From contig DF237693.1 in NCBI GenBank assembly GCA_000708835.1, forward strand, positions 1 through 38,468: 38,468 nucleotides of DNA. Direction: 5' to 3'. The translations under genes and the position numbers were made by a program. The notes under the pieces were generated by a model. That model was not told where the DNA came from and made no database searches. It saw only the letters and a program-made list of their open reading frames with translations. Source of the DNA: Klebsormidium nitens (Eukaryota > Plantae > Klebsormidiophyceae). Shown here in pieces: positions 510 through 34,400 of the stretch; the stretch's first letter is position 1; every line of letters starts with the position of its first letter.

Positions 510-1813
510 AGTTTAATTAAAATACCAGTATCTTCGTGAGTCATGACTTTACCAGCCCTGATTTTCGCCTTTTCCGTCCTTCATGCTGATGCAGCCATCA
601 TTACATGAAGCATTTACTGCTCAACACGTTCTTGTCGAACTTGAAGGTGTGGTGGACGGTGCCAGTGTGAATGGAGCGTTGGAGTCTGGAAGTGGTTGTT
701 TCCGACGTGGCAGTACTAATGCCAGTAATGGCAGACCCAGCTCGAGTAGGGTTTCAAGCAGCAAATTGAAGTTAATTCAAGGGGGCAAGGGGGTGGCAAA
801 GTCCGCAACCGAATGCCACCACTCCAAGCAGCAATGGTTTTCAGGGGTTTGGTGAAGATCGTTTCCAGATTAGATATCCAGCCGTCCCGTAAGAGTTGAT
901 TCCCGCTGAGAAAGGTGTGCCATCCTGCACTTGCAATAAACCACAAGTTAGAGCTTGGGTTGTTGGTGGCCGTGGGGCTGTGAAGTCGTTGGTAAGCTGA
1001 GACTTGGTTGCTCAAACAAGAGGGTAAAGGACGAGAAAGCAGGGTTTTTACCAGGTCGAAAAGACGGAACCCGTGGATGAGCTCCTAACACTCGGCACGC
1101 CGCACTTTCATTATGGATTCAAAGCTCAGCCATCAAGAAAAAACACCGTCAGCTAGTTTATGGGGGGCACTGTTTGGGAAGTGTTGGGGCCGGGGGGGTG
1201 CAAGCATGGAGGATGCAGAGGGAGAGCTGAACCCCCAGAGACAGAGGCAGCGGCTCACGCGAAGGCTCTCGATGCTTTCAAAGTTTGCAGAAGGAAGTGG
1301 GATGGGGGGGAGGTCAGTTCCTCAAAGCCAGTGGAGATGTTTGAGCTGAGGCCATCTCTTGTTTGTGGCTGCTGCTTGACATTCTGAAGGATGGTTGCAT
1401 ATTTGCTTCCTTGATAAACTTCTAGTGAGTTTAGGTTTTCTTCAAATGCTGCAAGACGCCAGGGGCACACATATGTGAACATCTTTGGATCTGGTGACGT
1501 CCCATAGGCTTGCAGTCGTGTCTGTGATGTTGAGCCAGAGTAGAGACGGGGTTGCGACCCTCTGTTGAAATTTGAAACACCAAAGCTCTGATCAACTTGC
1601 TTCTTGCCTTGAATGTAAGCTCTTCAACTGAACATTCCTCACCTCATTCCTCAGAACACCCTGCACCTACCTAAGCTGAGATGGAATGATCAATGAGTTC
1701 AAAAGTCCTTATACCTGAAAATGGTTGACGCAGAAAGAGTGTCCAAAGTTCATTCTGACCAGAGACTGCAAGTTATGCACAGATGTCCTACTTTTCCACC
1801 TTGACGACCACGT

Positions 1814-4800
1814 ATGTTACTGAGCAAATCACCGTGCCCATGCAGTGCCGCGACAGCTGTCACGCAGCTGCATCTCAGTTTCGAGCGACCCGCCCCGAGT
1901 GCCCACCTGAGAAACATCCCCACCCTGTCCTCTGAGGAGATCGCTCTCATCCAAACCAGCTGGGCTAGGGTCGTGGAAGTGCATGGGATTGGCGCCATCT
2001 CGCTGTTCTATGTGAACTTATTTGCACTGGCGCCCCATCTGGAAGGACTGTTCAAGAGGACCAAGTGAGTGCGTTCACACTGTTGCGAGGCGTCAACGAC
2101 CCGTCTTGAGTGAAGTTGTTTGCACCGGCGGTATACAGAGGGAAAGAAGGTTTAAGAGCTTTGAGGGTTTTATGTACTCATAGCATCAGGACTCGCTGTC
2201 AAAGAGTCTTGCATTCTGAGCACAGAAAAGTGATCTGGATCCAGAAAGACCACGCAAGCTTTCTTTCATATCAACAGACATGCACTGTTCTCCCCCGACA
2301 ACTCCTTGCGGAAACTGAGTCCGTGCTGTGAGAATCTGTCCAACTCTTAGTTTGCGGGGAAGTTGAGTGGGAGTGTAGTTCTTTGAGAAAGACATGTGAA
2401 AGAGTACCTAAGCGTCGTTTCTTGTCATGTGAGACTGGATAATGGATAGCAAGCTCCGCGTTCCAAAAGCGTAAGGTACAATCTGCAGGGGTATTCAAGA
2501 GGCAATGTTCCAGGACATGATGGTCACCCTAATCGATAAGCTGCACGATTGGGAGTGGGTCGTGCACACGCTCGAGGCGTCGGCCATTCGGCACCTGCGC
2601 TACGGCGTATCCGCGTCCATGTTTTCTCCTGTCGGCGAGGTAAGTGTTGAAGTGTTTCTGTGTTATAACTGTTTGAATAATGACTGCTCTTGTGATTCAA
2701 GTTCTGGGGTTTGGGGCATGGATGGTCAGTTCAGACTTTGGGCGCATGCGCTGCGGCACACCCGCGGTTCTGCTCGCCCCAGTCGGCGAGGTATTGTTTG
2801 GATTCTACTGCCTGAGAGATTCTACATGCAGCCTGCACAACTATCAGTTCTTTACTCTCCAGCGGATCAGACTGAGGCCTGTATTTGCGTTTGGTAAGTC
2901 GGGTGTAGAATTTCGTTTCCTGACCTTGCTCAATGAGAAGCTTAGACTGTCTCTGCAGACCTCCTGAGGTCCTCAACCGTGATCAAGATTGACTTCGGCA
3001 TGGGCAAACGAAGAGCGAAGTAACTTTACTATGTGATTTGCCGGTGTTACGGGAAGACGCCCACATAAGGACATGAACGGGGCTCAATTGATCTGATCAT
3101 TCCTCCAGGGTAACGTTAATTTTATACTGGAAGGTAATTGAAGAGGCGTGACTTTCCCAGAGAAAGAAATTTAATCCGCACATGATTTGCAAGGTGGAAT
3201 CTATAATCCGCAGGCTGCTGGATTTTGACCGTTTGTCAAATCCCTGGCGAATCTGATGGAAGTCTGCTTCCAGTCTGAGGGGACCAAACACCCCAGGTAC
3301 ATAGGTTTGCATCCTGAACCATGTGCCAGCAGCCAAAACTCTAATTGCCCCAACCCGAAAATTGGTGGAATCAAAGTCCGAAGGGTCTTGTTTGTAACCC
3401 TTGAATTTTGGGTTGGGGCAAGAAGGGGTTTAGGAGCTATACTGATTGAGGAAGGTTAACCTTGCACAATTGCTCTAACTACTTGATAACTAACCACTAG
3501 ACCAGACCCAATCCGCAGGCCAACCGTGGTCCCCCCAGCGCTCGGGACACTCCATAACGCAATCTAGACCAGTCCATCGACGCGAATTCATCGGACGGCG
3601 CGGAACATGGGTCCGGCTCTCTGAGTGGGGTTTGGTCCCCCGGCTTCCAGTATATCCTCATCAATCTCGTTGTTGCCTACAGGCGCTCCTCAAAACATTG
3701 GACATGGGTTTGGGGGACTACTGGACTCCCGCAACAAAGGCTTCCTGGGTGAAGATGTGGACGGCAATCGTTGCCGTAAGCTGCCCTTCTCTCATCTTCT
3801 TTCTGACGTCCAACGTTTTCTGACCGGCTCCACCCGTCCCGCCAATTGTGGAGTACTCAAGATAACAAGCTGTAAGTGTGAATATCAATTCTGTGGTACA
3901 ACCGGTGCCTCCCATCTACACAAGGAGGGTTTGTCAACCACTTCTTATTCCTCTGCACCAGCCTGGCCGCGTTGTTTGAAGCAGGAAATTAATTAGTCCA
4001 ATAATCTCAGTGCGCGCCCTTCGAGTTTCTAAGCTTAAGAAGTGTTGACCCTTTATTAGGTGCCCAAACGGTTCTCTCCGTGCCACTTATGATGCGGCAC
4101 TTGGCTCAGTCACGAGAAGCAACATACCGGGTTCATTGTTTGACCTGCTGACATCATTGGCTGACATTGCTGTTGTGAGCCGCGGGACTGCTGCTTATCT
4201 GGTTATGCCCAGTCCCGCTTCCTTCACACCAAGTCAGATTAGTCGCAGACCTTGGACCCTTCACTTCTTCTCCCGTGGTTGATGGAACCGCTTGCTTCCG
4301 TTAATCATATGCCAGCGTATGCTTGAGCAGGCAGCCAAACGTTGCGGTTAATCGCCTTGACCCAGAACGGTTGAACTCGCAGGCGGCCAAACCCGGCACT
4401 TAAGGCCCGTAACCTAGAACGGTTGAGTTCCTCTCTCCGCAGGTCATGTCGGCGCATCTGAGGGCTGACGGCCTGACCCGCGCCGTTACGTGCAACAGTT
4501 TCGCTCTAGTCACGGCCGAAGTGGACCCAAAAACACTTTCCGTTTTCGCTCGGCTGATCCGTACTGTGTTCCGTTTCCGTTCAGGTCATGTCGGCGCACT
4601 TGAGGGCCGACGGCCTGACCCGTGCTGTCGCGAACAACAGTTTCGCTCTAGTTACGGCCGAGCTCGAACGCGCGCCTCGGGGGGAACGGGTCCGGTGGAT
4701 GCTAACCAAACTGCCCAGCGGGCTGACCCCCCTGCTCATGGCAATCCGCGACAAGAAGGTTCGCATCGTGAAGTGAGTTCTGCGCAGCTCAAATCTGCGC

Positions 4801-7800
4801 AATCGAAGTTTGTGCTACTGTAGAGTCGCCACCTGCTTTGCATCATCCTGAAAAACCAATCGCGCAGGTCGTATATGCTTTCTGACATTCTGGCAGTCGG
4901 CGCGCGGCGACCGCACCGGTTACCCCCTCCTTTCAGATCTTGCGCAGCCGCATTTGCTGAAGGCTTCAGAACACGGTCAAAAGGCCGTTAAGAGAAAATG
5001 GAGTGACGCGCAGGTACATGCGTATTATATTCTGGCCATCGGCGCCCGCCGATCGCACCGGCTACCATCACCTTGCAGAAATTGCGCACACTCGATCGCT
5101 AACGACATTGAAACATGGTTCAATGAACATTAACAGAAAGCCCGTTAACAAGATACGGGTTAACGCGCAGGTACATGCTGTCGGATATTCTGCATGGCCC
5201 CATTCTGGCCATTGCACCGGCTACCACCACCTTTCAGAGATTGCGCAGACTTAATCGTTTTCAAAGGCCCCGGACAATTTTGGTTTAAAAAGGCCGTTAG
5301 TTACGGACTCACGTGAAAGGGCCAACGTGCAGGTACATGCTTTCGGATATTCTGGCCATCCGCGCCGACCGTACTGGGTACTACTACGGCCGCGCTGAGC
5401 TGTGGGCCGCACACCCGACGATCGTCGGCGAGATTGTCGAGAACGTCCCGACGGCGGTGAAGGAGTTGCTGGACGGCTGCTACTGGCAGAGCGGCCACTC
5501 CTCGGGGGGCCTGAGACGGGTGAGTTGTCAACCCCCCAATATGGGAAACGGGATCATAGGAGCATTCAGCAGGGGGGCTGAAATGAGTGAATCTTAGTCC
5601 ACAAATGTGAAGACGTTCCTGGCAGAGGGGCCATTCCTCGGGGGGCAAGAGACGGGTGAGTCGTCGACCCCCCGGAAATGGGAAGAGAAATCAAAGGGAC
5701 GAGTGCAAGGGGCCCGTTGAAGAGCAACATTCTGGGCAACACCTGAATGTTTCATCGGGTCTGTCAAAAGCATGCTTTACAGGATCTGCTTTTGGTAAAG
5801 GGAATGCGAGCGAGCAGCCAAAACCTGTAGGTGCTCCTTCGATCTGCACGTCGTGTCTCGACGTCCGTTGAGAGTTTTATTTAAGTCGATTCCCTACAGT
5901 GAGAGCAGAAGGGTGCATTGAAGTGGGCTACGGCAAAATTAACCAAGCCGTTTCATCTGCCTTTTTGTTGGCAATCTAAACGCTTTTGAATCAAAAGCGC
6001 ATGGGCGTTACCAAACGCTGGTCGCCAAATGGGTCCCCCAACTCGAAACATTGCCCTTTGACATGAGAAAACCGGGAGCGCAAAGCCAAGATGGATTACC
6101 TTTTCCGCTTACTAGTTGATTGTCGCAGGCAGCTCAGTTTCTTGAATCAACCGATTAGAGCGCGGCTGAAAGCTGCGAAGTGCTTCCTTGTCAGTAAACT
6201 AGGCCTGGCGTCTACTCTTTCGAGCCCATTCTTCCTAGCAATGCAATAATCGAGTTTGTACATTGAGAGCCCTGTAAGTCGCGAGCCTTGGACCAGCTCG
6301 ATCAAGAGACACCGTCGCAGAACTTGCAAGGCAATCAAACCTCGAGGCGTTTCAGAATGTCTCTTCGCTTGAGACTTTAGGTATGTATTCTCGAAGTTAC
6401 GGGCAGGTCATCAAACATTGAGAGCCCGTCTGGAGAACCTCCCGTCACGTCTTCATAACGCCCACAAAACAAAGCTTGCCGCACATTTCTTGAAGAGTCG
6501 CGAGCGTGTAGTCCGAACACTATTCATATGATCCCGGCGCCTCCTCGAGAGTTAACCAGCGACCGATTCAAGGAAACCGTAACCAATTTATCTCAAAAGA
6601 AATTCGACCGAGTCCGGACCAGTCGCTTGTCTTGAAACGACTCGATTATCTCCCTCTAAGAACAAGTAATCGGGGCTGAAAACCAGCCGAAGGCTTCCAG
6701 ATTATCGATGCTCTTGCGGCCGCCCTTTTTCAAAGCCGACACTTCCAAGATTTCGTGGTAAACACTTCAAATTTTTTCCTGTGTCCGTGCATGGCTCAGG
6801 CAAACTTCTACGTCAAAGGCCTTTACGGCAATCCTAACTCAGATTCTGCCTCATAAGAGGCAATAAGGGCTAGAAGCCGACCGAAAACCTCCCCAAATAA
6901 CTGAATGCTGTTGCAGCCGTCTATTCGAAAAGAGACACTGACTTCAAAATCTTTGTGGTAAAAACTTCTCAACATGTCATTGCACAGGCAAACTTCTACA
7001 TCAAAGGCCTTTACGGCGACCCGGACCAGCCCGTGCGAGCCTCTCCGTTGGCTCAGATGCTCAACCTGCGGGGCAACTCGGCGTTCGAGCACCCCGTGAC
7101 TGGGATTATCATCTTCCAGAAGTGGAACATGTTCGGGCGGTCCGCCTTTCTCCGGAGCATGATGCTGGGTTGCGTCGCATTCCTGTTCCTCATTATGGGG
7201 TGAGCAGAACCTGAAACAAACCGCCTTCAAGTTGACACAGGAGTTTTTGGCTGTTAACCATGGATGGTTAGGGGCTGTTTGTGGCTGGTCAGAGACTGGT
7301 TATATGTCCAGCAACCAGACTCGCACCTGAATCAGCCCCGGATCAAGACAAGGTCAAGGCCGGGTTATTTGTTTAGTAACCTGAGACTCAGTCTAATAAT
7401 CAGCCTGGTTAGAAGCCAAAACTTGCTGTGAGACCTTGCAGTTGAATATAAGTAAATGAACGTCTGATCTGCCAACGTTCGACTGGGACTCCTTTCGGGA
7501 TGGATGGACAAACTCTAGTTGTCAACAGCGGGCGGTTTTTCGTCGACGCTAATGTCGAACTCTGCGGAGCCGGCCAAGCTCGTAGTTCAAAACCAAACAC
7601 AAGGCTTGATCCCTTGAAATCCTGTAGATTGCATTGCCCTTGAAACAGAGTCCGTCCCCCCTCAGGTACATCGCGTTGCCTCGCCAGTTAGAGGGCCTCC
7701 CCTTCCGGGCCCTCTTCTGGGCATACGTGATCTCCGATATGATCTCAGAGATCCGGCGCTCTATAGCGGTCGGGTGCATCAAGGCCACCCTTATGGGCGT

Positions 7801-10800
7801 GACCGTGCTTCTGCCCGTGCACTTCCTATCGGTTATGCAATTCGTAAAGCTTATCATGACCTCGCTCGTGTTGGTCTCCATCGGGTTCGAGCACACGTGG
7901 AACAAGGGGGATGGGTGAGTGCCCGTGACATCAGCATCTGAGAGTTCAGCGGTTTGCGGGGACGCTGCGATAAGGATTATTATACCTCAATCCGCGATGG
8001 GCCCTTTTCTGAGAGTCACGATCTGGCACGCCGCGCCGATTCTGTTGGCCTCCGAACCCGTGAAAGGTAGCAACAGAAGGAACCCGAAGGCCCTCGATTG
8101 TAGGAAAGGAGCAGATTGTTGCACTTCTCTCGCGTCCCGTGAACCGTTGGATCCGCACGTAGAAAGAAGCCGCCGACGTTCGTGCTCACTTGTTTGCTAA
8201 AGCGAAAAAGCTACTTCGCATCGCCACATCTCAGTTACGAAATTGCCCCTGTAGAAGGGAATTTGAACCATGCGATGCTTGTATGTCGACCTTTTCGTCT
8301 CGAATCTTTGCCTTGCTGGCGGAACGCGCTTGCACTCGCCAAGACTCACAAAACTGCTCAAATCAGTGGCCTAAAAAGCAAAGCTATCCTGAAGCTCTGC
8401 TTCATGCGTTCCTTGTCTTTCTGCATCCGACACGTGTCAAGACATTTACCACGCGCATCTCCACTGCAGGGTCACGGAGAGCATCTTGATAGCCACCGCC
8501 ACCATAGCGTATTGCTTCCAGATGCTCCATTATTACCTGGCGTCCAACGAGCTATCCTCCTTCGTCTTCACTCTGAGCCGGATGCTATACGACCTCGTCA
8601 AGTTCCTGGCCGTCTTTCTGCTCATATGGATCGGCTTCGCTCTCGCCTTCTACATCCTCTTGCGAACCCAACCCAAAGCGGACGGATCCACCGTCGACTT
8701 TACGGACGTCCACTGGTCATTCACCACTTTCTTCATCATGCTTTTCGGGTAAGCGTATTGATCAAACTCAACTTAACTTACATATATGGTAACCGCACTG
8801 GGACGGTGGGGTTACATTGGAGGCCATTAGGTGTGTAGGGGTGCGGAGCAGGTACTTCCCTGGGTTACGGTTCTTGTTAGCCTGAGCTTATAATCAGCTT
8901 ATAGCGGAGTTGATTTCGGCGCCCACTCGAGCTTCCTGTTTGCACCTGTAAGTTGGAACAAGTGGTTCACGGTAAAGGTGGAGGCAGTGCGGGAAGAGAA
9001 AAAACTGGTATTTTCGGTTTTAAAGATCACGGTTTTAGGGTTTGGCTTTGGTTTGGCGACAAATCATAGACCGCAGGCATTGGTACATCTACTAACTTTG
9101 AGAAAAGGACAACCGGGTTTTCGTTCGAGAGTATCCTTGACCACTGTGAGCGTTTTGATCACAAAGCCTGTGCATTTCCGGCGAGACGTCTTCTGTCTGG
9201 TACAATTTGTAAAGAAACTCAGGAAGTAACTCACACAAAGCATTTTCACGTGCAGCTATGCGGAGTTTGAGTTTCGGCAGATCGAGGACCGGCGTCTACA
9301 GGGCGTGGCGATCGTGCTGTGGTTCATCTACCTGATGCTCGCAAACCTGCTTCTTCTGAACCTTCTGATCGCCCAGTTCTCGACCACTTATGAGGCGGTC
9401 TACAAGGCCAGCTATGCCGTTGCGCTGAGGAAGTGAGGTTTTTCTCCCTTTCCTAGTTTTCCGTAGCAGTACGTTTTTCTAAGTGCGATCATATGCATAA
9501 TATCCCAGTAATTCTCGACCAATCATAAGGCTGCCTACAAGGGCCAGCTATCCTCTTGCGCTGAGGAAGGTTTTCTTCCCTTTCCTTGTTTTCGAATAGC
9601 GTTTACTCTCTCTATATCCTTGTCATAGTTTCCCGTGAACGTGAGTTTCTTCAAGCAGTCAACGTTTCCCCACCTTCTTACAACCTACGGAACAACCGTT
9701 TCCAAAAACAGCTGTGTCATTTGAGTGGAGGAAGTGAGCGCCATCCTAGTCCTTCGTAGGTGGAAGAGACGCTTCTAAAATCAATGTCTGCCGCTAGCTG
9801 ACTTCCTTTCCTTTGCCTCTTGCGGATCCGCCGTCGATCGAACGGGGCCTGGGGCTCAGAGAACAAATTCCTCCAAAAATTCGCGTCTCGTCTGCAATCA
9901 TCTCAACTAGGCGGCACTATATTGAGTTAACCAGCCAAACGGTGTGCTTTCTTGCTGTGGTTCTCCCCGGCCTCTTCGGTTGCCCAAAGCGAGTCGACTG
10001 AAAATCTTCGAGCGGATGCAGACTGCCGGCCGCAATGCTTGACATTTCTTCGTTCACCTCGACTTCTTAGCAATTTCTCCAGCCTCCACGTCATTCGGCT
10101 CTTTGAGTCGGCTGAGATTCAAGCGCACAGAGCGGAAATTTCTTTTCAACCACGCAGACTCGTTGACCAGGAATGCACCGAGTCAGGTCGGAGCCATGAG
10201 ACTCCGTATGGGGATGACGTCTGCCCCGAGCAATTGCAATCGGCCGTTTCCCTGTGATCGATAACACAGATAGTCTTGGCGGTTTACCAGATTGCTTACC
10301 AGACTTGAGTCCCAGGTTACTGGACAACCGACCGGGCTCTAACCTTGTTCTGGGCTTGTTACCGCCCAAATCCGGTTAGGGACATGTAACTACTTCTTAA
10401 CCAGTCCGTAGCCAGCCCATAAACATCCAGGATCAAGGGCCAACTTGTGCTACCTGACGTGGCTTCTTTTCCCGTAACGTGGCTTCTTCTTTGCAGGCTG
10501 TGCAACGAGCTTTTGGCGATTGAGGGGACTCTCTCAGTTGAGGAACGGCGGAAGCACTACAACAGGCTGAAGTTTGACGAGCCGCTGGAGTTTGACGAGT
10601 TCGACATGGGCCCGCCGGGGGGCATCCAGGTACATACGCTATGCCGCTGTGCTGATAAGTTCCTCGCATCCACCGCCTTATGAGGTGTTTGGGTTGGACG
10701 CTCGAGGCGTAAGCTTTGCCTGCTTTTTGTTTGACACAAAATGATACGCAGCCCCGGGTTCGCCTTTCATCAGCGTTTCTATCGTTTGTTACACCGGTTG

Positions 10801-12231
10801 GTTTTCGTCTTCGAATTGCTTCGAGGCACGCGCGTGCGTGGGAGGCCTTGCTAGAACGCATATCTCCCCGGCGAGGGGCTTGCTGACGTGTCGCCAAGCA
10901 CCTGAGTTCGTCATGTGACGTCACGCAGCTGCTCCAAGATGTGGACCCCTCCGCCGACGACACTGACGACTCGGACCGCATCGAGCGATACCCCGGGAAA
11001 GCGAGCCCCGACTTGCCTTGGCCCCCGAGAGACTACGACGATGACTCGGTTGCGACCAACCGGGCAAACACGCATAACCCACCCGAAACGAGCAACGAAC
11101 GTGGGCGCCCACAAGAAGAAAGAAACGTGGGCTCTGATGATAAGCGGTCCCCGATCCGGTTCTGGGACAACAATGGGCAGGCAGACCGGTTCCGGTCGGT
11201 TGTCGACGTGGCAGAGGGGTCGGCGCTTACCGACGCCGAGGCGTTTTACCGGGCGGGCGTGCTTCGTGCGAGGGGGGCAAAGGGCGGTGTCTCGCCGCAG
11301 AGGCGCGAGGCAAGTGTCGCCGTTGTGACCGCTTCGGAGCTAGCAAAGCACACCGGTCCTGCATCAAAGTGGCTGGCTATTGACGGAAAGGTGAGTGCCG
11401 AGTTGAGCTTGAAACAGCTTTTCCGCGAAGTCTTCGAGATCAGTTTGTGCGTGATGGGAAAGAAGGGCCACGTATGTAAAACCGGTTTTGGTTACTGCAT
11501 CGGCAGGTGGCTCTGGAAAACATGTGAAACTTGTGGTCTTGTGGTGTACTCGGAGGGACGGAAGTAGTTTCTGCATTGAGAAAGTATTCATTGCCAGGAT
11601 TACGAGGATCGAGCCTTGCTCGCTTTTGAAAACTTGGATTCTTTGCGTACTCTGCGCTGAAGGAAGGATTGAGCGGACAATTGACACTAAATTGTCTTGT
11701 CTGATAGTACCGGCTTGGAAATGGAAGATTTCTAGGGAGTGCTACGACAGACCAAGCTCAAATGCATAGCCACTTGAACTGAGCGTCTCGCAGAGTTAGT
11801 AAGTTCGACGTCGAGATGCGGCAGATCAGCCCAGACACTCAAGGCTGTGTTCGAGCGGTACAGAGAACCGCAGGAAGTTTCGGTTGCTTAACCAGGCTGA
11901 TTAGAAGACTGGAGTCTCAGCTTATTAGACATGACAAAAAACCGGGCTTTAACCTCGTTCCAGGGCTGGCTAATACCGCCCAAATCCAATAATTGGACAC
12001 TTGACCACTTTTAACCAGCCCATTAGCAGCCCATAACCAGCCACATGTGAATCTGCTTCTGCATTACAGGTTTACGACGTCACGCGTTTTGTAGACAGTC
12101 ACCCCGGTGGTCCAATCATCACCTCAGCTCTGGGGCGGGACGCCACACGAGAGTTCGACGAATTTGGCCACAGCGCTTACGCCCGGAGTCTCCTAGAGCC
12201 TCTCAAGGTCGGACAACTTCTGGTCGAGTGA
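1814..12231 (+). CDS. Globin-ankyrin-TRP-type cation channel-cytochrome b5 fusion protein (about 847 aa, 12 exons)
   Basis: Predicted exons: 1814-2064, 2489-2639, 3683-3775, 4585-4772, 5333-5519, 6988-7199, 7666-7914, 8470-8748, 9256-9432, 10497-10629, 10929-11390, 12070-12231. All 11 introns are GT..AG with matching phases. Total is 2544 nt (848 codons), ending at TGA 12229-12231 with no internal stop. The start codon is uncertain: a CAG at 1843-1845 could be an acceptor for an upstream exon. Confidence 0.88.
1925..4596 (+). CDS. Globin domain of the fusion gene (3/3 fold, flavohemoglobin/single-domain-globin-like), exons 1-4
   Basis: Spliced translation: LSSEEIALIQTSWARV..ISLFYVNLFALAPHLEGLFKRTK/GIQEAMFQDMMVTLIDKLHDWEWVVHTLEASAIRHLRYGVSASMFSPVGE/ALLKTLDMGLGDYWTPATKASWVKMWTAIVA/VMSA. 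It shows the A-helix Trp, B9-B10 FY, CD1 Phe, putative E7 Gln, proximal F8 His in RHLRYGV, the G-helix F..VGEALL and the H-helix W.....AW pattern. Confidence 0.93.
4597..5345 (+). CDS. Ankyrin-like repeat(s) between the globin and the channel domain
   Basis: SGLTPLLMAIRDKKVRIVKYML matches the ankyrin consensus G.TPL..A......IV..L. A weaker preceding repeat reads GLTRAVANNSFALVTAEL. Confidence 0.6.
4860..5250 (+). repeat. Three decayed tandem copies of the exon-5 acceptor junction of the globin-TRP gene
   Basis: CGCAGGTACATGC..ATTCTGGC..GCACCGGCTACC at about 4862, 5006 and 5163 (period about 150 bp), versus the functional copy at 5327 (GTGCAGGTACATGCTTTCGGATATTCTGGCC..). Confidence 0.85.
7147..10545 (+). 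CDS. Six-TM TRP-type ion channel domain (S1-S6, pore loop, TRP-helix region), exons 6-10
   Basis: Four upstream hydrophobic segments, then the S4-S5 linker and S5 (LSSFVFTLSRMLYDLVKFLAVFLLIWIGFALAFYILL), pore helix and filter (VHWSFTTFFIMLFGYAEFEF), S6 (VAIVLWFIYLMLANLLLLNLLIAQFSTTYEAV) and a post-S6 helix (ALRKLCNELLAIEGTL). These match TRPV/TRPC hallmarks such as LLLNMLIA.M..TY. Confidence 0.88.
7236..7430 (-). mobile_element. MITE-like element copy A (CACAG...CTGTG ends)
   Basis: 25-bp imperfect terminal inverted repeats: CACAGGAGTTTTTGGCTGTTAACCA versus the reverse complement of the right end, CACAGCAAGTTTTGGCTTCTAACCA (20/25). The interior is homologous to copies at 10265 and 11869. No clear target-site duplication. 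Confidence 0.6.
10265..10449 (+). mobile_element. MITE-like element copy B
   Basis: Starts CACAGATAGTCTTGGCGGTTTACCA and shares the interior GAGTCCCAGGTTACT..ACCGGGCTCTAACCTTGTTC..TACCGCCCAAATCC with copy C and the reverse complement of copy A. Ends ..CCAACTTGTG. Confidence 0.5.
11322..12231 (+). CDS. Cytochrome b5 heme-binding domain at the C-terminus, exons 11-12
   Basis: VVTASELAKHTGPASKWLAIDGK/VYDVTRFVDSHPGGPIITSALGRDATREFDEFGHSAYARSLLEPLKVGQL. Canonical W..I.GKVYDVT.F...HPGG....GRDAT..F...GHS..A with both axial histidines. The last exon is too short to appear in the supplied ORF track. Confidence 0.95.
11869..12049 (+). mobile_element. MITE-like element copy C
   Basis: CGCAGGAAGTTTCGGTTGCTTAACCAGGCTGATTAGAAGACTGGAGTCTCAGCTTATTAGAC.. 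aligns with the reverse complement of 7340-7430. Ends ..AACCAGCCACATGTG. Confidence 0.55.
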
Positions 12232-12514
12232 GATAGTCGCGTAACATGGATGTTACGTTTATTGGTCCTACTAATTGGAAACATAGTGGACCCGTTTGAC
12301 AATTTTGACTTGGTGAGGGGGCCATTCAGTCCGCGGCCGCACGCAACCGCTAGACCGTACAAAACCGTCAAATGTCGCGGGTCACTGCTCCATTTCAGTG
12401 CTAGCCCAGTCTGACTGTTTTTTCTTAGTGAGGGCGCCAGCCAGCTTGCACCCGCAGCAGCTAGACAATACCGTCCCAAGTCAGTTTTTCCTCCATCAAG
12501 GTCAAGGTGCAAAA

Positions 12515-12554
12515 GCATACCATATTGCATACCATATTGCATACCATATTGCAT
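12515..12554. repeat. 12-bp minisatellite (GCATACCATATT)x3
   Basis: Three perfect units plus GCAT, downstream of the globin-TRP stop codon. Confidence 0.9.
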
Positions 12555-14050
12555 GGGCTTGGGAGCCCGCACAAACAAGTCAAAATTAGATTTGCCGCAA
12601 ATGGGTCACTTTCGGCGTCTACCAAAATAGGTTTGATCTGTCAGCTTACGAGCTAGTGACCGAACATCCATCTTGATCACGGTACATTTCAGGATACAGT
12701 CAAAGTCCCGGACTCAACAATAGTGTCGATCGGATCAGCAGCGAAGTGAAGCCTGGCCGGCCCTCTGGATCTGCCCTTTTACATGCAATATTAATGATCG
12801 ATGTGACGATATATAACCTACTACCGGCGTTCGGTTTTAGTGACTTAGTGCGCAACTTGGCAACGGTGCCTTGGGGTAGCTAATCGAACGGATATATTGA
12901 CACGGAAGTTGTTCGCCATCGCACGCGGCCGCCGCAGCTTCAAGCACGACGGTTTAAGCTTTTGATTTGCATCACAGCATGCCAATGATGTCGTCTATAC
13001 GCGCTGCGACGGTATGTAGTGCGCTTCATCTGCTTGAGTGCTGAGTTCAGACAAACCATTGAATACGCCCAACCGTTGGGCCGGCGCGTATTCAATGGTT
13101 TGTCTGAAATTGTTGAACAGCTCCGCGACTCCTGATGATTGATGCGCCGGGCCCAAATTCATGCATGACACCTCCCATGCATGCCGCGTATATAGGATGT
13201 ACGTACTCACAAGCTTCTACTGTACGTAGTAGGTGCCGGCATGCGCATGTTTGAACATCTCAAGTTATAGAAATCGAATTAAGGACATTAGGATTCACAA
13301 GAGCGCTCAGCTGGCACCATAAACGCTAGCAACAGTCACTAAGTTATTGTGCAGGCTGTGGGAGACGGTCGGTCCGGTCCGATCGTCTTCAAGCCTTCGA
13401 ATCGCAAGACTGATGACAACCAAACGGACAATCATCAGTATCGAACACAGAGCATGCACCCTCGAACTTCGGAAGTCACTTGACCACAGTAATCAGGAAG
13501 CATCGTTGTGCAGTGCCGCGCGCAGCTTCCAACGTGTGAAACCGTTTGCCCCGAACTGAAAGCTACTGGTTGAACCTAGTGCTTGTCGACCGGTAACAAG
13601 CCTCTTATGATTAGCCCACCTCTGCTCAATTGGTTCACATTTCTCAAGTTCTAGGCCTGTGATTTAACAACAACAGGAAGTCAAATGCAAGCCACCATAG
13701 TAAATAATCACGTGAATCGCTTTTGACGATTTTATTGTTTCTCGCTAACTGTGGAGCCGTGCATCAATAGACTCGCCCGCTGGGTCCCTCTTCGAGTCTA
13801 CGATTTCTGGTTGCAAAGCTCACTTCGGATCGTGAGATATTTATAACAGGGGACCTCCCTCGGACAGCATGCGTGGGAACCATTCTACACGCAAAAGCGC
13901 TGGTTGATTCCGAGTTGCGACACAATCTTCTCGCGCATGATACCACCTTATTTCCCGTACCTGTCATGTGAACCTCAGATAAGTGGGCAGCAAATAGATC
14001 TACCCAGCTCGTTGAATACTTCTCCATATTGAAAACGACCAACGAAACGT

Positions 14051-24624
<10,574 letters not shown>

Positions 24625-28424: not shown

Positions 28425-31400
28425 ATGGCTGCACCTGCGCTGACGTCATGCCGACCTCAGCACGTTACGCAGCCTGCACGCCATGGCACAGGGCCCCTTG
28501 CAGAGGCAGCTGTTTGGAAGGCGTGCTATCTGAATGCTCGGTCGTCGAACCACTGGGGAACCAGACTAGGAGTGACGGGGTTGTCAGAATTGACTGAATC
28601 TAGTAAAGTGCACAACCGGGGGGTTTGTACGTTAACTGGGACCCACTCCAAGCACAAGCAGTCGGCAGCGTGTTGCTCTGACTGGCCAGCTTTCAAGGCC
28701 AGCGGGGTTTCCTATCCAGGGGTCCATGGTCCCCCCTGGAGCGCACTGCGCGGCGCATCGACTTTCAGCACCGCTGGAGTCAATAAAGGCAGAAGGCGGG
28801 AGGGGGGGTTTGCAAAAGTGGGCCGCTCTGTCGTAGCGAGTGAGGTGGAAACCCGCAGTCCCTCACGTGCGGCTAGGGTGCCCCGAGCGAAATTGAAACG
28901 GGACTTGACGAACCCCACCAGCGAGGACCCTGCCTCTAAAGGAAACGGTCTTCCGCAGGCGTCAAGTTTGAGGGGTGAGCGTGTGGGGCAGTCTCCATTG
29001 GAACAACGGCGGAGAGTTGATAGGAAAGAGGAGGCGGGGGCTCCAGTAGGTGAACCGAAAGCTCAACGAGTGCGGAGCACGGCAGGGCAAGGGGTGTCCG
29101 GAGCAGGCGGTGGGCGTGAGGGGGGGTCGGGGTTGCCTGGGAATCATCGGCGGGGGAACTCGACTGCAAACAGCCCCCACGAGTCTCGGCAAAATGGTGT
29201 CGACGAGAGGTTTAAGAGCGACGGGGCTGCTGAAGGAAGTGACGGGAAAATTGGGTCAGCCGAGTATGGAGTACGTCGGTCGGATGCTGAGGCGGGGGAG
29301 GACGGTTCAGAAATCGGGTTAGCCAAATCGCGTGGGGTTGTGGAGCGGAACCCAGAGGTTAGGGAGCGGCTGCAGATGCTGCGGAGTAAGTATTTGAAGT
29401 CTGCGCCGGCTGGTAGGGGTGACGATCTGAGTGGGGTTAGAGACCAGAACGGGGTTAGTGGTCAACCTGGGGTCAGCGGCCAGAACGGAGTCAGCATTCA
29501 GAGCGGGGTTACCGGCCAAAACAGGGTTAGCGGCGGGGTTGCGAAAGGTCGAGGGGCTGTGCTGCTGGAGGTATTGAGGCGAAACAGGGAGGAAGCTGCA
29601 CGGCGAGACGCAGTCGGGGGGCCGGGAGATGGGGTGCCCGAGGGGGAGATGGGTGAGAATACAGCGATAGTTCAAGCACGGCGAGAGCAGAATAGGGGAA
29701 ACGATTGGCAGGATTCAATAAGGAGGGGCGCAGACCTAGGGAAAGCTAGAACGGATGCAACGAACGGGAGAGGCGATACCGCTGGTGAGTCAGCCGAAAG
29801 GGGCGCAAGGAGCGAGGGTCTCGCACGGAAGAATGTCAGAACAGCGACACCAGAACTCGGGAGCCTAGGGGGCACTGAGACTAGAGTCAAAGCGCGCACG
29901 TCGAATCAGGGGGCGCCAAATTTGTCAAGGTGGACGCAAGAGAATGGGAAAGCACACGTCGGTTTTGCGGGACCCGATCGGGAATGGGGGGCTTCCGAGA
30001 GCAGGCAGAGTACCCCCCGGAAAAAGGAGCAGGGGCCCCGTTTGGGGCCTATGGAAAGGGGCTGGGAGGTTTCGAGGCCGAAGTCTCGGGGGAGCGCTGA
30101 CGTCAGACTCACCGGTGCAAGCTCTGCGAGGGTGAAAGAAGAGGGCGATCAGGAAAGAAGGGCACGAAGCAGGTTAGCTAAACGAGCCCGTTTGTCCCTT
30201 TCTTCTTCTTTGCTTTCCGTTTCCTGGTTCCTTCCGTAGAGACACAGGCCGACAAAAACGTCTTAGCAGGTGGGAGTACACAATGACGGTACAAAAGCGA
30301 TGAAGAATATGCAATCACGGGGAACCATTTGTGAGAGACGACCTTCTCAAATCGGCACTGCAAGTCCATGGGGGCTAGAGACAGGGGTGGTCAGGAGGGA
30401 AGGGCACGAAGCAGGTGCCCTTTCTTGTGTATTCTTCTCGTGCTCTTTCCTTCTTGTTCTTGCAATAAGGGAAGCTCTGAAGGTGAATGCCTTGCTGGAT
30501 GGACTGAAATCAGCCCTTTCAAATGCCGAGAAAACCATATAAAGATTTCCTCGTCCGCAGAATTCCATTTCCAGGCTAACCGTAAATGTGTGGACTAGCA
30601 TGCAAATGCGCCAATGCAAGAGTGAATAGTCAAGTAGGGTAGGGCCTTGAGAAAGAACGGCCGGAAACCTCCGGTTGATTCTCAGCTCTCATCAAGGCAG
30701 AATCTCAGTAGAGTTTGTTAAAGAGTTGCTCGTTGTGACGCGAGCACACTCGTTTGCAGATTGCAACTGCAATTGGGGGCTTCACTCATAGAGCAACAAT
30801 CGTAATTCCGCACATATTCTGAGAAGTCGAGGGTCGCTTCGAGTGTCAGTCGTTTGTGAGCAGTCTGTGCACAGCGTTAAAATACCATACCTGTATCTAA
30901 GAGAAACTCCTGTGGTAAATTCAAGCGCCTCTTAGGTCGGGCTTCGCTTTTCTCACGCCGATCGAATCGCTCCTCGGGCAGAGTCGAAAGCTCAGCCCCG
31001 AAACGCTTTCGTTTCTAGATTGTAGGCACAATCAGATTGAGCTGTCTTCCTGAGCAATTTGATCGGCCTTTGGCGCTGGCAGGAGTTACGACCTACGGTG
31101 GCAGTTTGTTACCTAGAATGCCTTAGGCAGGTTGACATGAAAGTTGTTTCTGAATTGGATACTACTCAATTGTGCAATCGGAGAATGTATGCCACTTCTC
31201 ACACTAACTTTTGTCTTCGTTTCTGGTGTTCAGGGAAGAAGGGAGGCCGGTCGCCGTGACGCAACCGCCTTCCAGCGTGAGGGACTCGAGAGCAGTACCT
31301 GGGGCAAAGCGTGCTGACGTCACCGTAACGTCAGCATCCGTAACTGCCTCTCCGAGGGACAAAGTTGGCTCGGACGTCAGCACGACGTCAGCATCCGGAG

Positions 31401-34400
31401 CAGCCCCCCGAAGCAGAAGCATCGGTGGCCCGGGGGTAACGACCGGACGAGCAGTTGGAGGGGGAAGGGGCGGGGGATCCCTGGCGAAATCAGTCAGGGC
31501 CAGTAGGGGGGAAGGTGATGTCAGCATGACGTCATCTGCCGCTGGAAAGAGCGGAGATCCCGTGGATGACGCCTTGGAAATGGCGCGTCGTATGTTTGGC
31601 CGAGTGAAGGGGAGCGAGGTTGGGAGAGGGTTAGGCCAACCAGGGACTGGGTTAACGAAGAAGAGCGAGGGCAAGACCACAACTGTCGATGTTGATCGGA
31701 GATCTGTAAGAGGTGGGAAGGAGGGAAGCGTGTTGCGGGGGCGTAGTGTTGCAGCGGAGGAAGGTGCGAACCAGGTGAAGCAGGGGTCAGAGGGTCAGGA
31801 TGGGAAGTCCGGGGATTGGCAGAGGACCGAATGGCGCGCAGGGCCTCGGAAAGGTGGTGTGAATGCGGCCGCGGAAGAGGGGAGGAACTACGAAGACGAC
31901 TCTGACGAGGGCCTATTCGCACCGGAGGAGGAAGACGAGGAGTTGGACGTTGACGATGGTGGAGAAGAAAGAGAACTGTCCGCTGAGGAGTTGGCGGAAG
32001 AGAACGCGGAGCGGGCGCAGTTCACTGCAGAGGAACTAGAGTCGGGGAGAGAGTTGGAATATTCGGGGCTGCCGATAAGCCTGGGAGCGGAGGCGGAAGA
32101 AGCGCTGGCGGCGCAGTTTGGGGTGGAGGGTTTAAGCGGGTCAGAAGCCGGGTTAGGAGAGGGTTTGGACGGGGTAGAGGAGGGTTTGAACGGGCCAGGG
32201 GAGAGTTCCGAAGGTTTCGCAGAGGATTTTCGAGAAAGAGATACGGAGGAGGGGGCTGAGGAGTGGGAAACAGATGAAGAAAGTGCAGGGGGAGCGGACA
32301 CGGAGTCTGGCACGAACGAAGGGGACGAACAGACGGGGGCTCCGCTGGGGAAGCGCTCGAAGGTTCTGGCGATGCTAGAAGAAGTTTGGGGTGCGGATGA
32401 CGAGGGAGGGGAGGAAACAGGTGACAAAGCGGTGCGTTTCGAAACCAGGGGGCCGCAAAAGCCGGCGATCAGGGTGAGGGTTTTGGCTGAGGAAGAGAAC
32501 GTCTCTTTGGAGAGCTTGACGCCACTCGAGCGGGCCCGGATTCTTTTCCGGGGGGGCAAGCCCACACTGGGGGAGAGCAGGGAGAGTCCCCCCGGAGAGG
32601 AAGAGGACGGAGCAGAAAGGGCCCCGGCCCGAGTGACGTCACCAAAGTGGAGGCAGCCGTCAGCCGAGGCGGAGAGGGATCCCCCGCGGGTGTTGGAGTC
32701 GTCGAGGCGAAAGGTGACGACGTCGAGCGCGCAACGGAAGCGGCTTGGGCAGAAAGTGAAGAAGGTCGAGCCGCTCACGACGCGGGCGCAGGTTATCGAG
32801 CGGGTTAAGCAGCTGGCGCGCGACACCCTGCACGAGTTCCTGCAAATGCGGTTAGCGGACCGGTTACGGGTTGACTATATCGTTAACCACTGCCCGAAGT
32901 TCCTGGCGCGTCAGGTGCTCTTGCCGCTCGCCCAGAGCCAGAATCGGTCCACCCCGCCGGAGAAGCAGCTGCGCGCCCTGGTTTTCGGGTTAAGCGGAAC
33001 CCAGTTGGTAACCGCGTATGAGGAGGCTCTCGAGATCACCGACGAGCAGAAGGGGTTAGCGAAACGGGTTTTGGCGAGCCACCTGCACGTGCACCGGTAC
33101 ATGGAGAAGGGGATGGCGGAGAACATCGCGGAGAATTGTCCGATCTTTCTCGTGGAGGGGGTAATCGTTCCCGCATCGACGATACCCTTCGAGGCCCTCA
33201 GTGTCGTGCAGGTATTTTCCTGGAGAAGGTCACACAAGACACCCTTGACAGACGTTGGCTGAGCATTCCAGTTCCGCTCCTCTGTTTCGCGTCGTGTTTC
33301 TCGTTTTTATGACCTGCTTACGGTTCTGAACATGTACTTTGAGAGATCCGGTATGACGTCCCGAAATTCAGGACAAATGATGAAGCATCTGCTAGCCAAG
33401 AGTTGCACATGCGTCTGCTTAAACAGTTAGTTGGAGAACGTTCCAATTCTTTCACGTCGCCGTGCGACTTCGGCCGCCTGTGCTTTCTGCTGGTGTGATT
33501 CTGTGCGCGCCTTCATACTGAGCGCTCTCTCTGCGCTAAAATGCTGATGAGAAGATTTCGCCACCTATCTGCTTCTCGCCTTCATGGCGTTCTCGTCAGA
33601 AACCACAGACTGTGCTCCGCCTGCATCATACTCAAATTGGCTTTTTCTTCATTCCTGAGCCGGGTTAAGCCAATCCGATTCTCGTTCCGTGGTTTGACAA
33701 AGTAGAGCGCCGATACCTGCCGTAATTTTTCAAACCTCTGAACAAGGACTAGCGCGAATCAGCCCTTCTCTCGTTTCCCTCACGACTCCAGTCGAACCTC
33801 TGAACGGAGACAAGGCGTATCAGCCCTTTCCTCGTTTTCTTCTCAGCCCCCATTTATATACCTCCGAACAAAGACCAGCGCGAATCAGCGTTTCTCTCAT
33901 TTCCTTCTCAACCCCGAGCGGCACTAGTGGCGCAGATTGCGCCGCCTCGCCAACCATGCCAAATCACGAGACTGCTCTTTTCATTTCTCCCAGAAAGTCA
34001 GAAGCCTGGAAGTGACCGCGCGTGACACAGGACACCTGCAGAAATCACCCAACTGCAGGAATCACCCAAACTTTCTTGATACTGGCTTTTGCGAAACAGC
34101 TCAATGTTTTCCCTGGCGCAAGCATTGCCAACCGCTCAACTCGGATTCACACGTAGTCCCGTTGTTGATGTAACGCACCCCCCAACATTTGACGAAACTG
34201 ACTACCTCCGTTTTCCCCTTGCCCACAGCAAACCCGCTTCAAAGAGTGCTGGCGATGAAACCACTTTCGTCGAATCATGCTCTCGTTGCAGACATAGAAC
34301 ATTTCGTCCTACCTCCAATGGTGGGTTTCAGTCACGTCTGTTCAAAATGGCCTTGGGTCGTCAAACCCTCACTGTCCAACGACGCTGCTTCAGGAAAATT

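What the first reader, a model, noticed from the sequence alone, without database searches (positions are those of the whole stretch)
1814..12231. One polypeptide fusing a globin, a TRP-type channel and cytochrome b5: candidate self-recharging O2/NO/redox-sensing ion channel
Seen: 12 exons splice in frame into globin - ankyrin-like - 6TM TRP-type channel - linker - cytochrome b5. The joins are not loose gene-joining. Exon 4 (4585-4772) carries both the end of the globin H helix and the ankyrin repeat. Exon 11 (10929-11390) carries both the channel-side cytosolic tail and the first half of cyt b5. All three heme-ligand histidines are intact. Established: 6TM channels have both termini in the cytosol; cyt b5 is a physiological reductant of ferric globins (met-hemoglobin, cytoglobin); globin-coupled sensors use ligand binding to control an output domain. 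Inference: ligand or redox state at the globin could gate the pore, with the tethered b5 re-reducing the globin after NO dioxygenation or autoxidation. I know of no characterised channel with this architecture, but I cannot search to confirm novelty.
Basis: partly seen in the sequence, partly recalled or inferred. Interest (0 to 1): 0.95.

Follow-up and report, generated by a model that had tools for sequence, protein, structure and literature searches.

The report
Globin–TRP channel–cytochrome b5 fusion gene
A transcribed gene of the alga Klebsormidium nitens encodes one protein that joins an oxygen/NO-binding globin, a TRPV-like ion channel and a cytochrome b5, and it belongs to a large family of globin-bearing channels, mostly in dinoflagellates, on which I found no paper.

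Summary
The window is scaffold DF237693.1 of Klebsormidium nitens. The true first coding exon is 1206-1312, spliced to 1846, so the ATG at 1814 is intronic: 13 exons, not 12.

RNA contigs from four studies carry the six 5' joints (exons 0-6) exactly. The 3' joints were not seen directly. They rest on contig lengths, on family-invariant channel residues and the b5 start sharing exon 11, and on homologues.

Each domain is confirmed:
- a complete 3/3 globin (neuroglobin, Z 18) with TyrB10, GlnE7 and HisF8;
- a TRPV-like core (Z 16.8);
- a b5 with both histidines.

The architecture is not unique. There is a 67% paralogue, already noted by this scan as s1-326876. At least 339 globin-channel relatives exist, mostly dinoflagellate transcripts. 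Cytochrome b5 sits at the C-terminus here and at the N-terminus in some dinoflagellates. HisF8 is kept in 34 of 34 aligned proteins. Eight full-text searches found no paper on the family.

Gating by heme state, with b5 as re-reductant, is a reasonable but untested inference.

The parts
1206..1312 (+). Coding exon 0 (aa 1-36). N-terminal basic helix, conserved in the paralogue.
   Evidence: P0001 is reproduced only with this exon. Joint 1312>1846 is present in 4 RNA runs. Alignment with P0004.
1846..2064 (+). Exon 1 (aa 36-109): globin helices A-CD, with TyrB10 (Y91, 2009-2011) and PheCD1 (F105, 2051-2053).
2489..2639 (+). Exon 2 (aa 109-159): globin helices E-F and the start of G, with GlnE7 (Q112, 2496-2498) and proximal HisF8 (H144, 2592-2594).
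   Evidence: Alignment to Hell's Gate globin and neuroglobin. Joints.
3683..3775 (+). Exon 3 (aa 160-190): globin G helix and the first part of H.
   Evidence: Pfam Globin profile positions 86-114 on this exon alone. Joints.
4585..4772 (+). Exon 4 (aa 191-253): last turns of the globin H helix (to about aa 198), then ankyrin-like helix pairs with the invariant P-R-x-E-R motif (aa 221-225).
   Evidence: Globin fold covers model residues 63-198. Model 196-680 aligns to TRPV2 190-719. Invariant columns.
5333..5519 (+). Exon 5 (aa 253-315): linker domain with the invariant I-R-A-D-R...Y-Y and L-L-D-G-x-x-W motifs, and a beta hairpin.
   Evidence: pLDDT 83-94.
6988..7199 (+). Exon 6 (aa 316-386): pre-S1 region (invariant W361) and S1.
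   Evidence: Joint 5519>6988 in 4 RNA runs. Ion_trans match starts at aa 380.
7666..7914 (+). Exon 7 (aa 386-469): S2-S3.
   Evidence: Model helices. P0001.
8470..8748 (+). Exon 8 (aa 469-562): S4, S4-S5 linker, S5, pore helix.
   Evidence: Ion_trans E 2.6e-6 on this exon alone. Alignment to TRPC3.
9256..9432 (+). Exon 9 (aa 562-621): selectivity-filter region (G-Y-A-E), S6 with L-L-N-L-L-I-A (N597, 9359-9361), start of the TRP-helix equivalent.
10497..10629 (+). Exon 10 (aa 621-665): post-S6 helix and the first two strands of the conserved C-terminal beta block (F653, D657, G659, G662, G663, Q665).
   Evidence: Invariant columns. Strands 650-669 at high pLDDT.
10929..11390 (+). Exon 11 (aa 666-819): third beta strand and the invariant R685/G688/W696 channel tail, then a disordered acidic linker (about aa 701-794), then the first ~21 residues of cytochrome b5. 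No Met codon in the exon.
12070..12231 (+). Exon 12 (aa 820-872 plus stop): rest of cytochrome b5, with H830 (H-P-G-G, 12100-12102) and H853 (12169-12171). No membrane anchor follows.
   Evidence: Cyt-b5 E 1.3e-14 on this exon alone, profile positions 22-73. PDB cytochrome b5 E 1e-15.

Best explanation
The locus is one transcribed gene for an 872-aa subunit of a TRPV-like, probably tetrameric cation channel. In place of most of the ankyrin repeat domain, the subunit carries a cytosolic 3/3 globin. A ~95-residue disordered tether ends in a soluble cytochrome b5.

Proposed mechanism (inferred, not shown). The ligand or redox state of the globin heme (O2, NO or CO bound; ferrous versus ferric) is passed through the globin H helix into the ankyrin-like/linker/C-terminal beta-sheet coupling domain, the module that gates TRPV channels, and so changes cation (probably Ca2+) flux. 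The tethered b5, charged by a separate NADH-b5 reductase, returns the globin to the ferrous state after NO dioxygenation or autoxidation. The sensor therefore resets and also reports cellular reducing power.

Shown here: the gene structure, transcription of the 5' half as one spliced RNA, the three folds, the intact heme ligands, and family-wide conservation.
Inferred: heme binding, electron transfer, gating, and ion selectivity.
For: One gene:
- Six joints linking the globin exons to the S1 exon sit in single contigs of 2647-4056 nt in four RNA runs.
- Three of these contigs run 2004-2252 nt past position 7099, where the spliced model needs 1562 nt to reach the stop codon. The fourth stops within 1 nt of the exon 9 donor if exons 7-9 are spliced as modelled.
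- Exon 11 holds family-invariant channel-tail residues and the start of b5 in one frame without any Met codon.
- The b5 profile match runs unbroken across the exon 11/12 join.

Folds:
- Globin residues 63-198 superpose on neuroglobin over 134/134 residues at rmsd 2.0 and Z 18. Sequence E is 1e-14 to Hell's Gate globin and neuroglobin, with TyrB10, GlnE7 and HisF8 aligned.
- The core 196-680 aligns to TRPV2/TRPV1 from the last ankyrin repeats to the C-terminal strand, Z 16.8. Sequence matches: TRPC3/6 E 1e-9, TRPV, TRPA1.
- b5 scores E 1e-15 with both histidines.

Functional coupling:
- A 67% paralogue keeps all three domains.
- At least 339 relatives carry globins on the same channel core.
- HisF8 is kept in 34/34, PheCD1 in 33/33 and TyrB10 in 31/33 aligned sequences.
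- b5 is at the N-terminus in dinoflagellate P0082, P0115 and P0147. It is at the C-terminus in Klebsormidium and in a metagenomic eukaryote whose upstream exons also encode two globins.
- b5/b5 reductase is an established reductant of cytoglobin (PMC7475203).
Against: - No experiment bears on heme binding, electron transfer or gating.
- The 3' joints (6>7 to 11>12) were not seen in reads. RNA runs hold more of the 3' half than exons alone would give (0.33-0.47 against 0.285 expected), so some 3' introns are retained in part of the RNA. Retention of intron 10 would give a b5-less channel.
- Most dinoflagellate relatives listed have no b5, so a fused b5 is not needed for the family's basic function.
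- The tether is long and disordered, so no geometry links b5 to the globin.
- By spacing from S6, the Trp of the TRP helix is an invariant Ala (A618) in this family. Coupling may therefore differ from TRPV.
- GlnE7 is specific to Klebsormidium; the dinoflagellate proteins have Leu with His next door.
Confidence: 0.5

Rival explanations
1. Tethered enzyme rather than sensor. Globin plus b5 form a membrane-anchored NO dioxygenase (or nitrite reductase). It protects or locally conditions the channel, or simply uses it as an anchor, and has no allosteric control of the pore.
For: The TyrB10/GlnE7 pocket and the nearest solved relatives (Hell's Gate globin, Vitreoscilla Hb, flavohemoglobin, neuroglobin) are of the NO-dioxygenase type. 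A globin fused to its own electron donor is the logic of flavohemoglobin. b5 fusions normally feed an enzyme domain, as in the flavocytochrome b2 hits.
Against: The modelled globin H helix (175-198) is separated by a single non-helical residue from the first helix (200-206) of the channel's best-conserved cytosolic domain. Globin and channel core have stayed joined across at least 339 relatives. An anchor role would not need a conserved TRPV-type coupling domain.
Confidence: 0.2
2. Two independent inputs. b5 is itself a redox-sensing or partner-docking module for the channel and does not reduce the globin. Globin and b5 report different signals, for example O2/NO and NAD(P)H state.
For: The long disordered tether and the variable position of b5 (N- or C-terminal) fit a loosely attached module. 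Most relatives work without b5.
Against: Every b5-bearing member examined also carries globin(s). The apparently globin-less P0005/P0039 have two globins encoded in upstream exons. The globin heme is the only evident electron acceptor in the protein.
Confidence: 0.12
3. Structural replacement only. The globin has taken the place of the ankyrin repeat domain as an assembly or scaffold module, and heme chemistry plays no signalling role.
For: The globin sits where TRPV/TRPA channels carry ankyrin repeats.
Against: HisF8, PheCD1 and TyrB10 are conserved across distant lineages, as expected for a heme pocket in use.
Confidence: 0.08
4. Annotation artefact or mainly separate products. The domains are made as separate proteins from alternative transcripts.
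For: The 3' joints were not seen directly. Excess intronic words in the 3' half of RNA runs, and the X7 contig ending at the exon 9 donor, show some unspliced RNA.
Against: Four independent contigs join the globin exons to the S1 exon. Exon 11 has no Met codon and holds both the channel tail and the b5 start. A Trinity transcript in EukProt and ~3.5-kb Logan contigs (assembled sequencing runs, unspliced ORFs) of other species hold globin plus channel in one ORF.
Confidence: 0.04

Closest known systems
TRPV / TRPA (group 1 TRP) channels
   Same: Six transmembrane helices with a pore loop; L-L-N-x-L-I-A in S6; the last ankyrin-like repeats, a linker domain, and a beta sheet completed by a C-terminal strand. 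Model 196-680 aligns to TRPV2 190-719, Z 16.8. Sequence hits to TRPC3/6, TRPV, TRPA1 and Nanchung/Inactive.
   Different: No six-repeat ankyrin domain; a globin takes its place. By spacing, the TRP-helix Trp is an invariant Ala. A cytochrome b5 sits on a long tail. Identity is about 14-16%.
Bacterial globin-coupled sensors (HemAT, DosC, AfGcHK)
   Same: An N-terminal globin joined through a helix to a C-terminal output domain; ligand or redox state of the heme controls the output (PMC7475203).
   Different: Their globins belong to the sensor (S) family, and their outputs listed in the review passage seen include chemotaxis (MCP/aerotaxis) domains. Here the globin is neuroglobin/flavohemoglobin-like, the output is an ion channel, and the host is a eukaryote.
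Flavohemoglobin and the cytoglobin / b5 / b5-reductase system
   Same: A TyrB10/GlnE7-type globin kept ferrous by a dedicated electron donor, supporting NO dioxygenation. b5 reduces cytoglobin efficiently (PMC7475203).
   Different: The donor here is a tethered b5, not an FAD/NADH module, so an outside reductase is still needed. The whole assembly is part of a membrane channel.
Dinoflagellate di/tri-globin channel proteins (e.g. Noctiluca scintillans A0A7S1AZ59 = P0137; MMETSP transcripts P0082, P0115, P0147)
   Same: Same channel core with the same invariant linker and C-terminal motifs; the channel-proximal globin has HisF8, PheCD1 and TyrB10; some carry b5.
   Different: Two or three globins; b5, when present, is N-terminal; E7 is not Gln. 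Identity to the Klebsormidium protein is 21-24%. Known only as automatic annotations.
Guillardia theta chimeric b5-plus-three-globin proteins (EKX33177.1, EKX39126.1; PMC4101818)
   Same: Cytochrome b5 fused to several 3/3 globins in proteins of more than 1000 residues, the same N-terminal layout as P0115.
   Different: The paper reports no channel part.
TRPM2 (NUDT9-H domain) and other TRP channels with fused sensor or enzyme domains
   Same: A soluble ligand-binding domain of enzymatic origin fused to a TRP channel and used for gating (PMC11573590 abstract).
   Different: The ligand there is a nucleotide. No heme domain is involved.

Membership tests
Globin (3/3 fold, neuroglobin/flavohemoglobin-like) | Proximal His at F8 | tested here: met
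   H144 aligns with F8 of 3s1i, 3wfw and neuroglobin. Kept in 34/34 aligned family members.
Globin (3/3 fold, neuroglobin/flavohemoglobin-like) | Complete A-H helical sandwich with Phe CD1 | tested here: met
   Model residues 63-198 superpose on 134/134 residues of neuroglobin, rmsd 2.0, Z 18. F105 is kept in 33/33. Pfam Globin E 1.7e-9, 38.6 bits against a cut-off of 22.
Globin (3/3 fold, neuroglobin/flavohemoglobin-like) | Binds heme b | not testable with these tools
   Needs spectra of the expressed domain.
Globin-coupled sensor (S family) | Sensor-type (protoglobin/HemAT-like) globin domain | tested here: not met
   All 46 PDB sequence matches at E<=0.01 are Hell's Gate globins, neuroglobins, Vitreoscilla Hb, plant, invertebrate and other animal Hbs, cytoglobin or flavohemoglobin. 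None is a HemAT or GCS globin.
Cytochrome b5 | Two axial His (H-P-G-G and a second His) in the b5 fold | tested here: met
   H830 and H853 align with the ligands of microsomal b5, E 1.2e-15. Pfam Cyt-b5 E 3.2e-21 over profile positions 1-73 of 74.
Cytochrome b5 | C-terminal membrane anchor of microsomal / outer-mitochondrial b5 | tested here: not met
   The protein ends 3 residues after the domain. It is a soluble, tethered b5 domain, as in other b5 fusion proteins.
TRP channel superfamily | Six transmembrane helices with a pore loop between S5 and S6 | tested here: met
   Ion_trans aa 380-613, E 1.2e-10. Six long helices plus a pore helix in the model. Hydropathy peaks.
TRP channel superfamily | [quoted passage not shown] | tested here: inconclusive
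   N-L-I-A of S6 is present (N597 to A601; N in 33/35). A pre-S1 Trp (W361) is invariant. By spacing from S6 (TRPV1 numbering from my own knowledge), the TRP-helix Trp is an invariant Ala (A618). The other positions were not mapped.
TRPV-type architecture | Linker-domain beta hairpin joined by a C-terminal strand next to the TRP helix | tested here: met
   Strands 303-318 and 650-669 at pLDDT 84-94. Model 196-680 aligns to TRPV2 190-719 and TRPV1 229-757. This is model-level evidence only.
TRPV-type architecture | Six-repeat ankyrin repeat domain | tested here: not met
   Only about two ankyrin-like helix pairs (aa ~200-260). Pfam Ank models score E 0.013-0.026, below their cut-offs. A globin precedes them.
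TRP channel superfamily | Tetrameric cation-conducting pore | not testable with these tools
   Needs electrophysiology or cryo-EM. The acidic residue in G-Y-A-E aligns with the Glu of TRPC3's filter region.

The most novel reading that the evidence does not exclude
This family would be the first ion channels gated directly by a covalently attached heme sensor: globin-gated TRP channels that turn O2/NO/redox state into a cation (Ca2+) signal. In Klebsormidium, an unidentified eukaryote and some dinoflagellates, a built-in cytochrome b5 resets the sensor. The family is abundant in dinoflagellate transcriptomes, so it could underlie gas or redox sensing in a major plankton group.
Probability: 0.4. 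Interest if true: 0.92.

Novelty: new variant of a known kind. Interest (0 to 1): 0.8.

Why it matters
To my knowledge, no ion channel is known whose sensor is a fused globin. O2 and NO sensing by TRP and K+ channels is, as far as I know, indirect (Cys oxidation, hydroxylases) or uses loosely bound heme. A channel carrying its own heme sensor and its own electron relay would make direct gas or redox gating testable in a single recombinant protein.

The comparative result widens the point. Hundreds of such proteins, mostly dinoflagellate transcripts and marine environmental contigs, are labelled only "globin domain-containing" or "hemoglobin-like flavoprotein", so a whole channel family has gone unrecognised. 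Cytochrome b5 joined at opposite ends in different lineages is Rosetta-stone-type evidence that b5 and the globin-channel work together. For Klebsormidium, an early-diverging streptophyte of soil crusts, it suggests a route from O2/NO status to Ca2+ signalling that land plants, which lack TRP channels, do not have.

Tried and rejected
- Pfam on single exons gave only a marginal globin hit (E 0.037), so it could not test the globin. The joined protein could not be pasted in. It was recovered as P0001 by a search of protein representatives with exon 8, which found only three hits in 1.84 billion.
- A profile search with the first seven relatives found one new member, because of the word prefilter. 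The family appeared only when a dinoflagellate-type member was used as the query.
- The first AlphaFold model (8 sequences, pLDDT 58.6) was too weak for the globin. The 35-sequence alignment raised it to 70.3.
- I first read P0005/P0039 as globin-less channel-b5 proteins, which would have favoured b5 as an independent sensor. I rejected this after finding two globins in upstream exons of the same strand, split off by a prokaryote-style gene caller.
- Separate-genes model: rejected for the 5' half by the RNA joints.
- Use of the duplicated decoy splice sites: none appears among the joints.
- Eight full-text searches for a prior description found none.

Full report
**Identity of the sequence.** The window is the whole 38,468-bp scaffold DF237693.1 of Klebsormidium nitens (assembly GCA_000708835.1). 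K. nitens is a filamentous streptophyte alga.

**Checking the observation.** Every intron is GT..AG, most with strong CAG|G and GTGAGT/GTAAGT consensus, and the product is 847 aa, as claimed.

I could not paste a joined protein into the tools, so I searched 1.84 billion representative proteins with exon 8 alone. That returned the public protein P0001: 872 aa, GAQ91211.1, UniProt A0A1Y1IPR6, named only "cytochrome b5 isoform". P0001 is identical to my model from residue 12 of the model onward, but it begins with a different N-terminus. A coding exon at 1206-1312 spliced to an acceptor at 1846 reproduces P0001 exactly. The gene has 13 coding exons and spans 1206-12231.

**Transcript evidence.** Sixteen RNA runs of the species hold words from the 3' half of the gene, and a largely overlapping set of eighteen holds the 5' half.

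I laid contigs of four RNA runs from four studies on 1100-7099. Each run has one long contig (2647, 3731, 3839 and 4056 nt). Each of those contigs carries the joints 1312>1846, 2064>2489, 2639>3683, 3775>4585, 4772>5333 and 5519>6988, with no other joint. The globin exons, the ankyrin-like/linker exons and the S1 exon are therefore on one spliced RNA.

In run X16 the share of 5' words (0.16) equals the exon-only expectation (0.159).

The indirect evidence for them is as follows.
- Three contigs continue 2004-2252 nt past 7099, whereas the spliced model needs 1562 nt to reach the stop. That leaves plausible 3' UTRs of 440-690 nt.
- The fourth contig ends within 1 nt of the exon 9 donor if exons 7-9 are spliced as modelled.
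- The share of 3' words (0.33-0.47) exceeds the 0.168 expected without exons 11-12. It also exceeds the 0.285 expected for exons alone, so some 3' introns are retained in part of the RNA.
- Lengths alone cannot exclude retention of intron 10 in the main contigs.

**Sequence logic for the channel-b5 join.**
- Exon 11 has no Met codon in its 154 codons.
- Its first 35 residues hold R685, G688 and W696. These are invariant in every relative and lie directly after the exon-10 residues F653, D657, G659, G662, G663 and Q665.
- In the model, the third strand of a confident beta sheet (664-669) straddles the exon 10/11 join.
- The same exon ends with the first ~21 residues of cytochrome b5. Exon 12 alone matches only profile positions 22-73, while the joined protein matches positions 1-73.

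The channel tail and the b5 start therefore share one exon and one frame.

**The three domains.** Residue numbers are those of P0001.

*Globin.* Pfam Globin scores E 1.7e-9. Solved structures match at E 1e-14 (Hell's Gate globin I, a globin-Roadblock fusion, neuroglobin), with Tyr B10 (Y91), Gln E7 (Q112) and His F8 (H144) aligned. In the 35-sequence AlphaFold model, residues 63-198 superpose on all 134 residues of neuroglobin at 2.0 A, Z 18.

*Channel.* Ion_trans scores E 1.2e-10. TRPC3/6 match at E 1e-9, with TRPV, TRPA1, TRPM2 and Nanchung/Inactive below them, aligned through S4-S6 including L-L-N-L-L-I-A. Foldseek ranks only TRPV, TRPA1 and Nanchung/Inactive chains among its top 50. VIA-align puts model 196-680 on TRPV2 190-719 and TRPV1 229-757, Z 16.8 over about 400 residues. 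That range runs from the last ankyrin repeats, through the linker domain, the six helices and the TRP-helix position, to the C-terminal strand.

The "ankyrin-like" label is supported by structure only. Pfam Ank models stay below threshold.

*Cytochrome b5.* E is 3.2e-21 in Pfam and 1.2e-15 to microsomal b5, with H830 in H-P-G-G and H853 aligned. No membrane anchor follows. Residues ~701-794 are acidic and predicted disordered.

**Relatives.**
- K. nitens has a paralogue on scaffold DF237810.1 (P0004, 948 aa, 67% identity over the full length). It has the same three Pfam domains and the same exon layout. The scan had already noted it (s1-326876).
- More distant relatives share the channel core and its invariant linker and tail motifs.
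- A search started from one of them found at least 339 proteins. These are mostly complete ORFs from dinoflagellate transcriptomes (Noctiluca, Zooxanthella, Kryptoperidinium, MMETSP) and ~3.5-kb environmental JGI contigs (likely transcripts). They carry two or three globins ahead of the channel.
- The ESM Atlas holds three clusters with Globin plus channel models, of 226, 169 and 56 members.
- Three MMETSP transcriptome proteins carry cytochrome b5 at the N-terminus, ahead of the globins.
- A metagenomic eukaryote (P0005/P0039) has b5 at the C-terminus, as in Klebsormidium. Its apparent lack of a globin is an artefact of gene calling: two globins, with TyrB10, GlnE7 and HisF8, lie in upstream exons on the same strand.
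- Across 35 aligned members, HisF8 is kept in 34/34, PheCD1 in 33/33 and TyrB10 in 31/33. Gln at E7 is particular to Klebsormidium within that alignment.

**Interpretation.** Three things argue that the heme domains work with the channel rather than merely beside it:
- the globin stays attached to a conserved TRPV-type coupling domain;
- the heme pocket is conserved over large evolutionary distances;
- b5 is joined at either terminus, and both termini are cytosolic and meet in the TRPV architecture.

The most economical mechanism is a heme-state-gated cation channel with b5 as the electron relay that keeps or resets the ferrous sensor. This matches the known reduction of cytoglobin by b5 and b5 reductase (PMC7475203). 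It remains an inference.

The main rival is a tethered NO dioxygenase with no allosteric role. Most relatives lack b5, so the relay is an optional addition.

**Novelty.** The gene model and its automatic domain hits are public. The architecture recurs in hundreds of proteins. The 2014 Guillardia paper described b5-plus-three-globin chimeras without mentioning a channel (PMC4101818). Neither a 2020 review of globin diversity nor a 2022 survey of TRP channels mentions such a fusion, and none of eight full-text searches returned a description. I rate it a new variant of known kinds (TRP channel; globin-coupled sensor) and a family that has not been recognised.

Noticed in passing
window 4440-4519 vs 4582-4661; 4866/5012/5170 vs 5333; 5619-5673 vs 5483-5537; 6790-6834 vs 6978-7022; 9512-9542 vs 9377-9407; also about 2750-2790 vs 2615-2645: Tandem copies of exon edges with their splice sites lie inside the adjoining introns, 135-190 bp from the real site (up to four copies of the exon 5 acceptor). 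None of these decoy sites is used in the RNA contigs. The paralogue shows the same pattern (L004, residues 357-381 repeated five times, 481-511 four times). Another note of the scan reports it in a globin gene (s1-267619). It looks like a genome-wide way in which introns grow in this alga.
   Followed up: partly
window 1100-1846 and upstream: The RNA contigs extend 564-678 nt upstream of position 1100, so the 5' UTR is about 700 nt or longer. The ATG at 1814 is intronic. The N-terminal 36 residues (basic, R-R-L-S-M-L-S-K) are conserved in the paralogue and modelled as a helix; they may be a regulatory site.
   Followed up: partly
window 6900-12300: RNA runs hold more of the 3' half than exons alone would give (0.33-0.47 against 0.285), whereas the 5' half matches exons only (0.16 against 0.159). 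The X7 contig stops at the exon 9 donor. The 3' introns seem to be removed late or incompletely. Retention of intron 10 would give a channel without b5.
   Followed up: partly
window 11941-12043, 10331-10429, and inverted at 7370-7411: A short dispersed repeat (about 100-150 bp) occurs in introns 11, 9 and, inverted, 6. It may be a miniature transposable element.
   Followed up: partly
window 12527-12562: Three tandem copies of a 12-nt unit (cataccatattg) lie in the presumed 3' UTR.
   Followed up: no
L003:1402-3100: In the metagenome contig ena:ERZ25071359 ctg24372, the gene caller split a di-globin-channel-b5 gene at introns, one of which holds a (TG)n microsatellite. Database entries P0005 and P0039 are therefore N-terminally truncated.
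   Followed up: yes
window 14051-15231 (minus strand), 14577-14930: The next gene downstream, on the opposite strand, encodes a 1413-aa PTEN-like phosphatase (DSPc, PTEN_C2). A 354-N assembly gap lies inside it.
   Followed up: no
window 34089-35909 and 37100-38233: Long open frames carry an mTERF domain (E 1e-15) and a Myb/SANT-like DNA-binding domain (E 2.5e-14). The long purine-rich frames at 28425-30236 and 31211-33259 have no Pfam match.
   Followed up: partly
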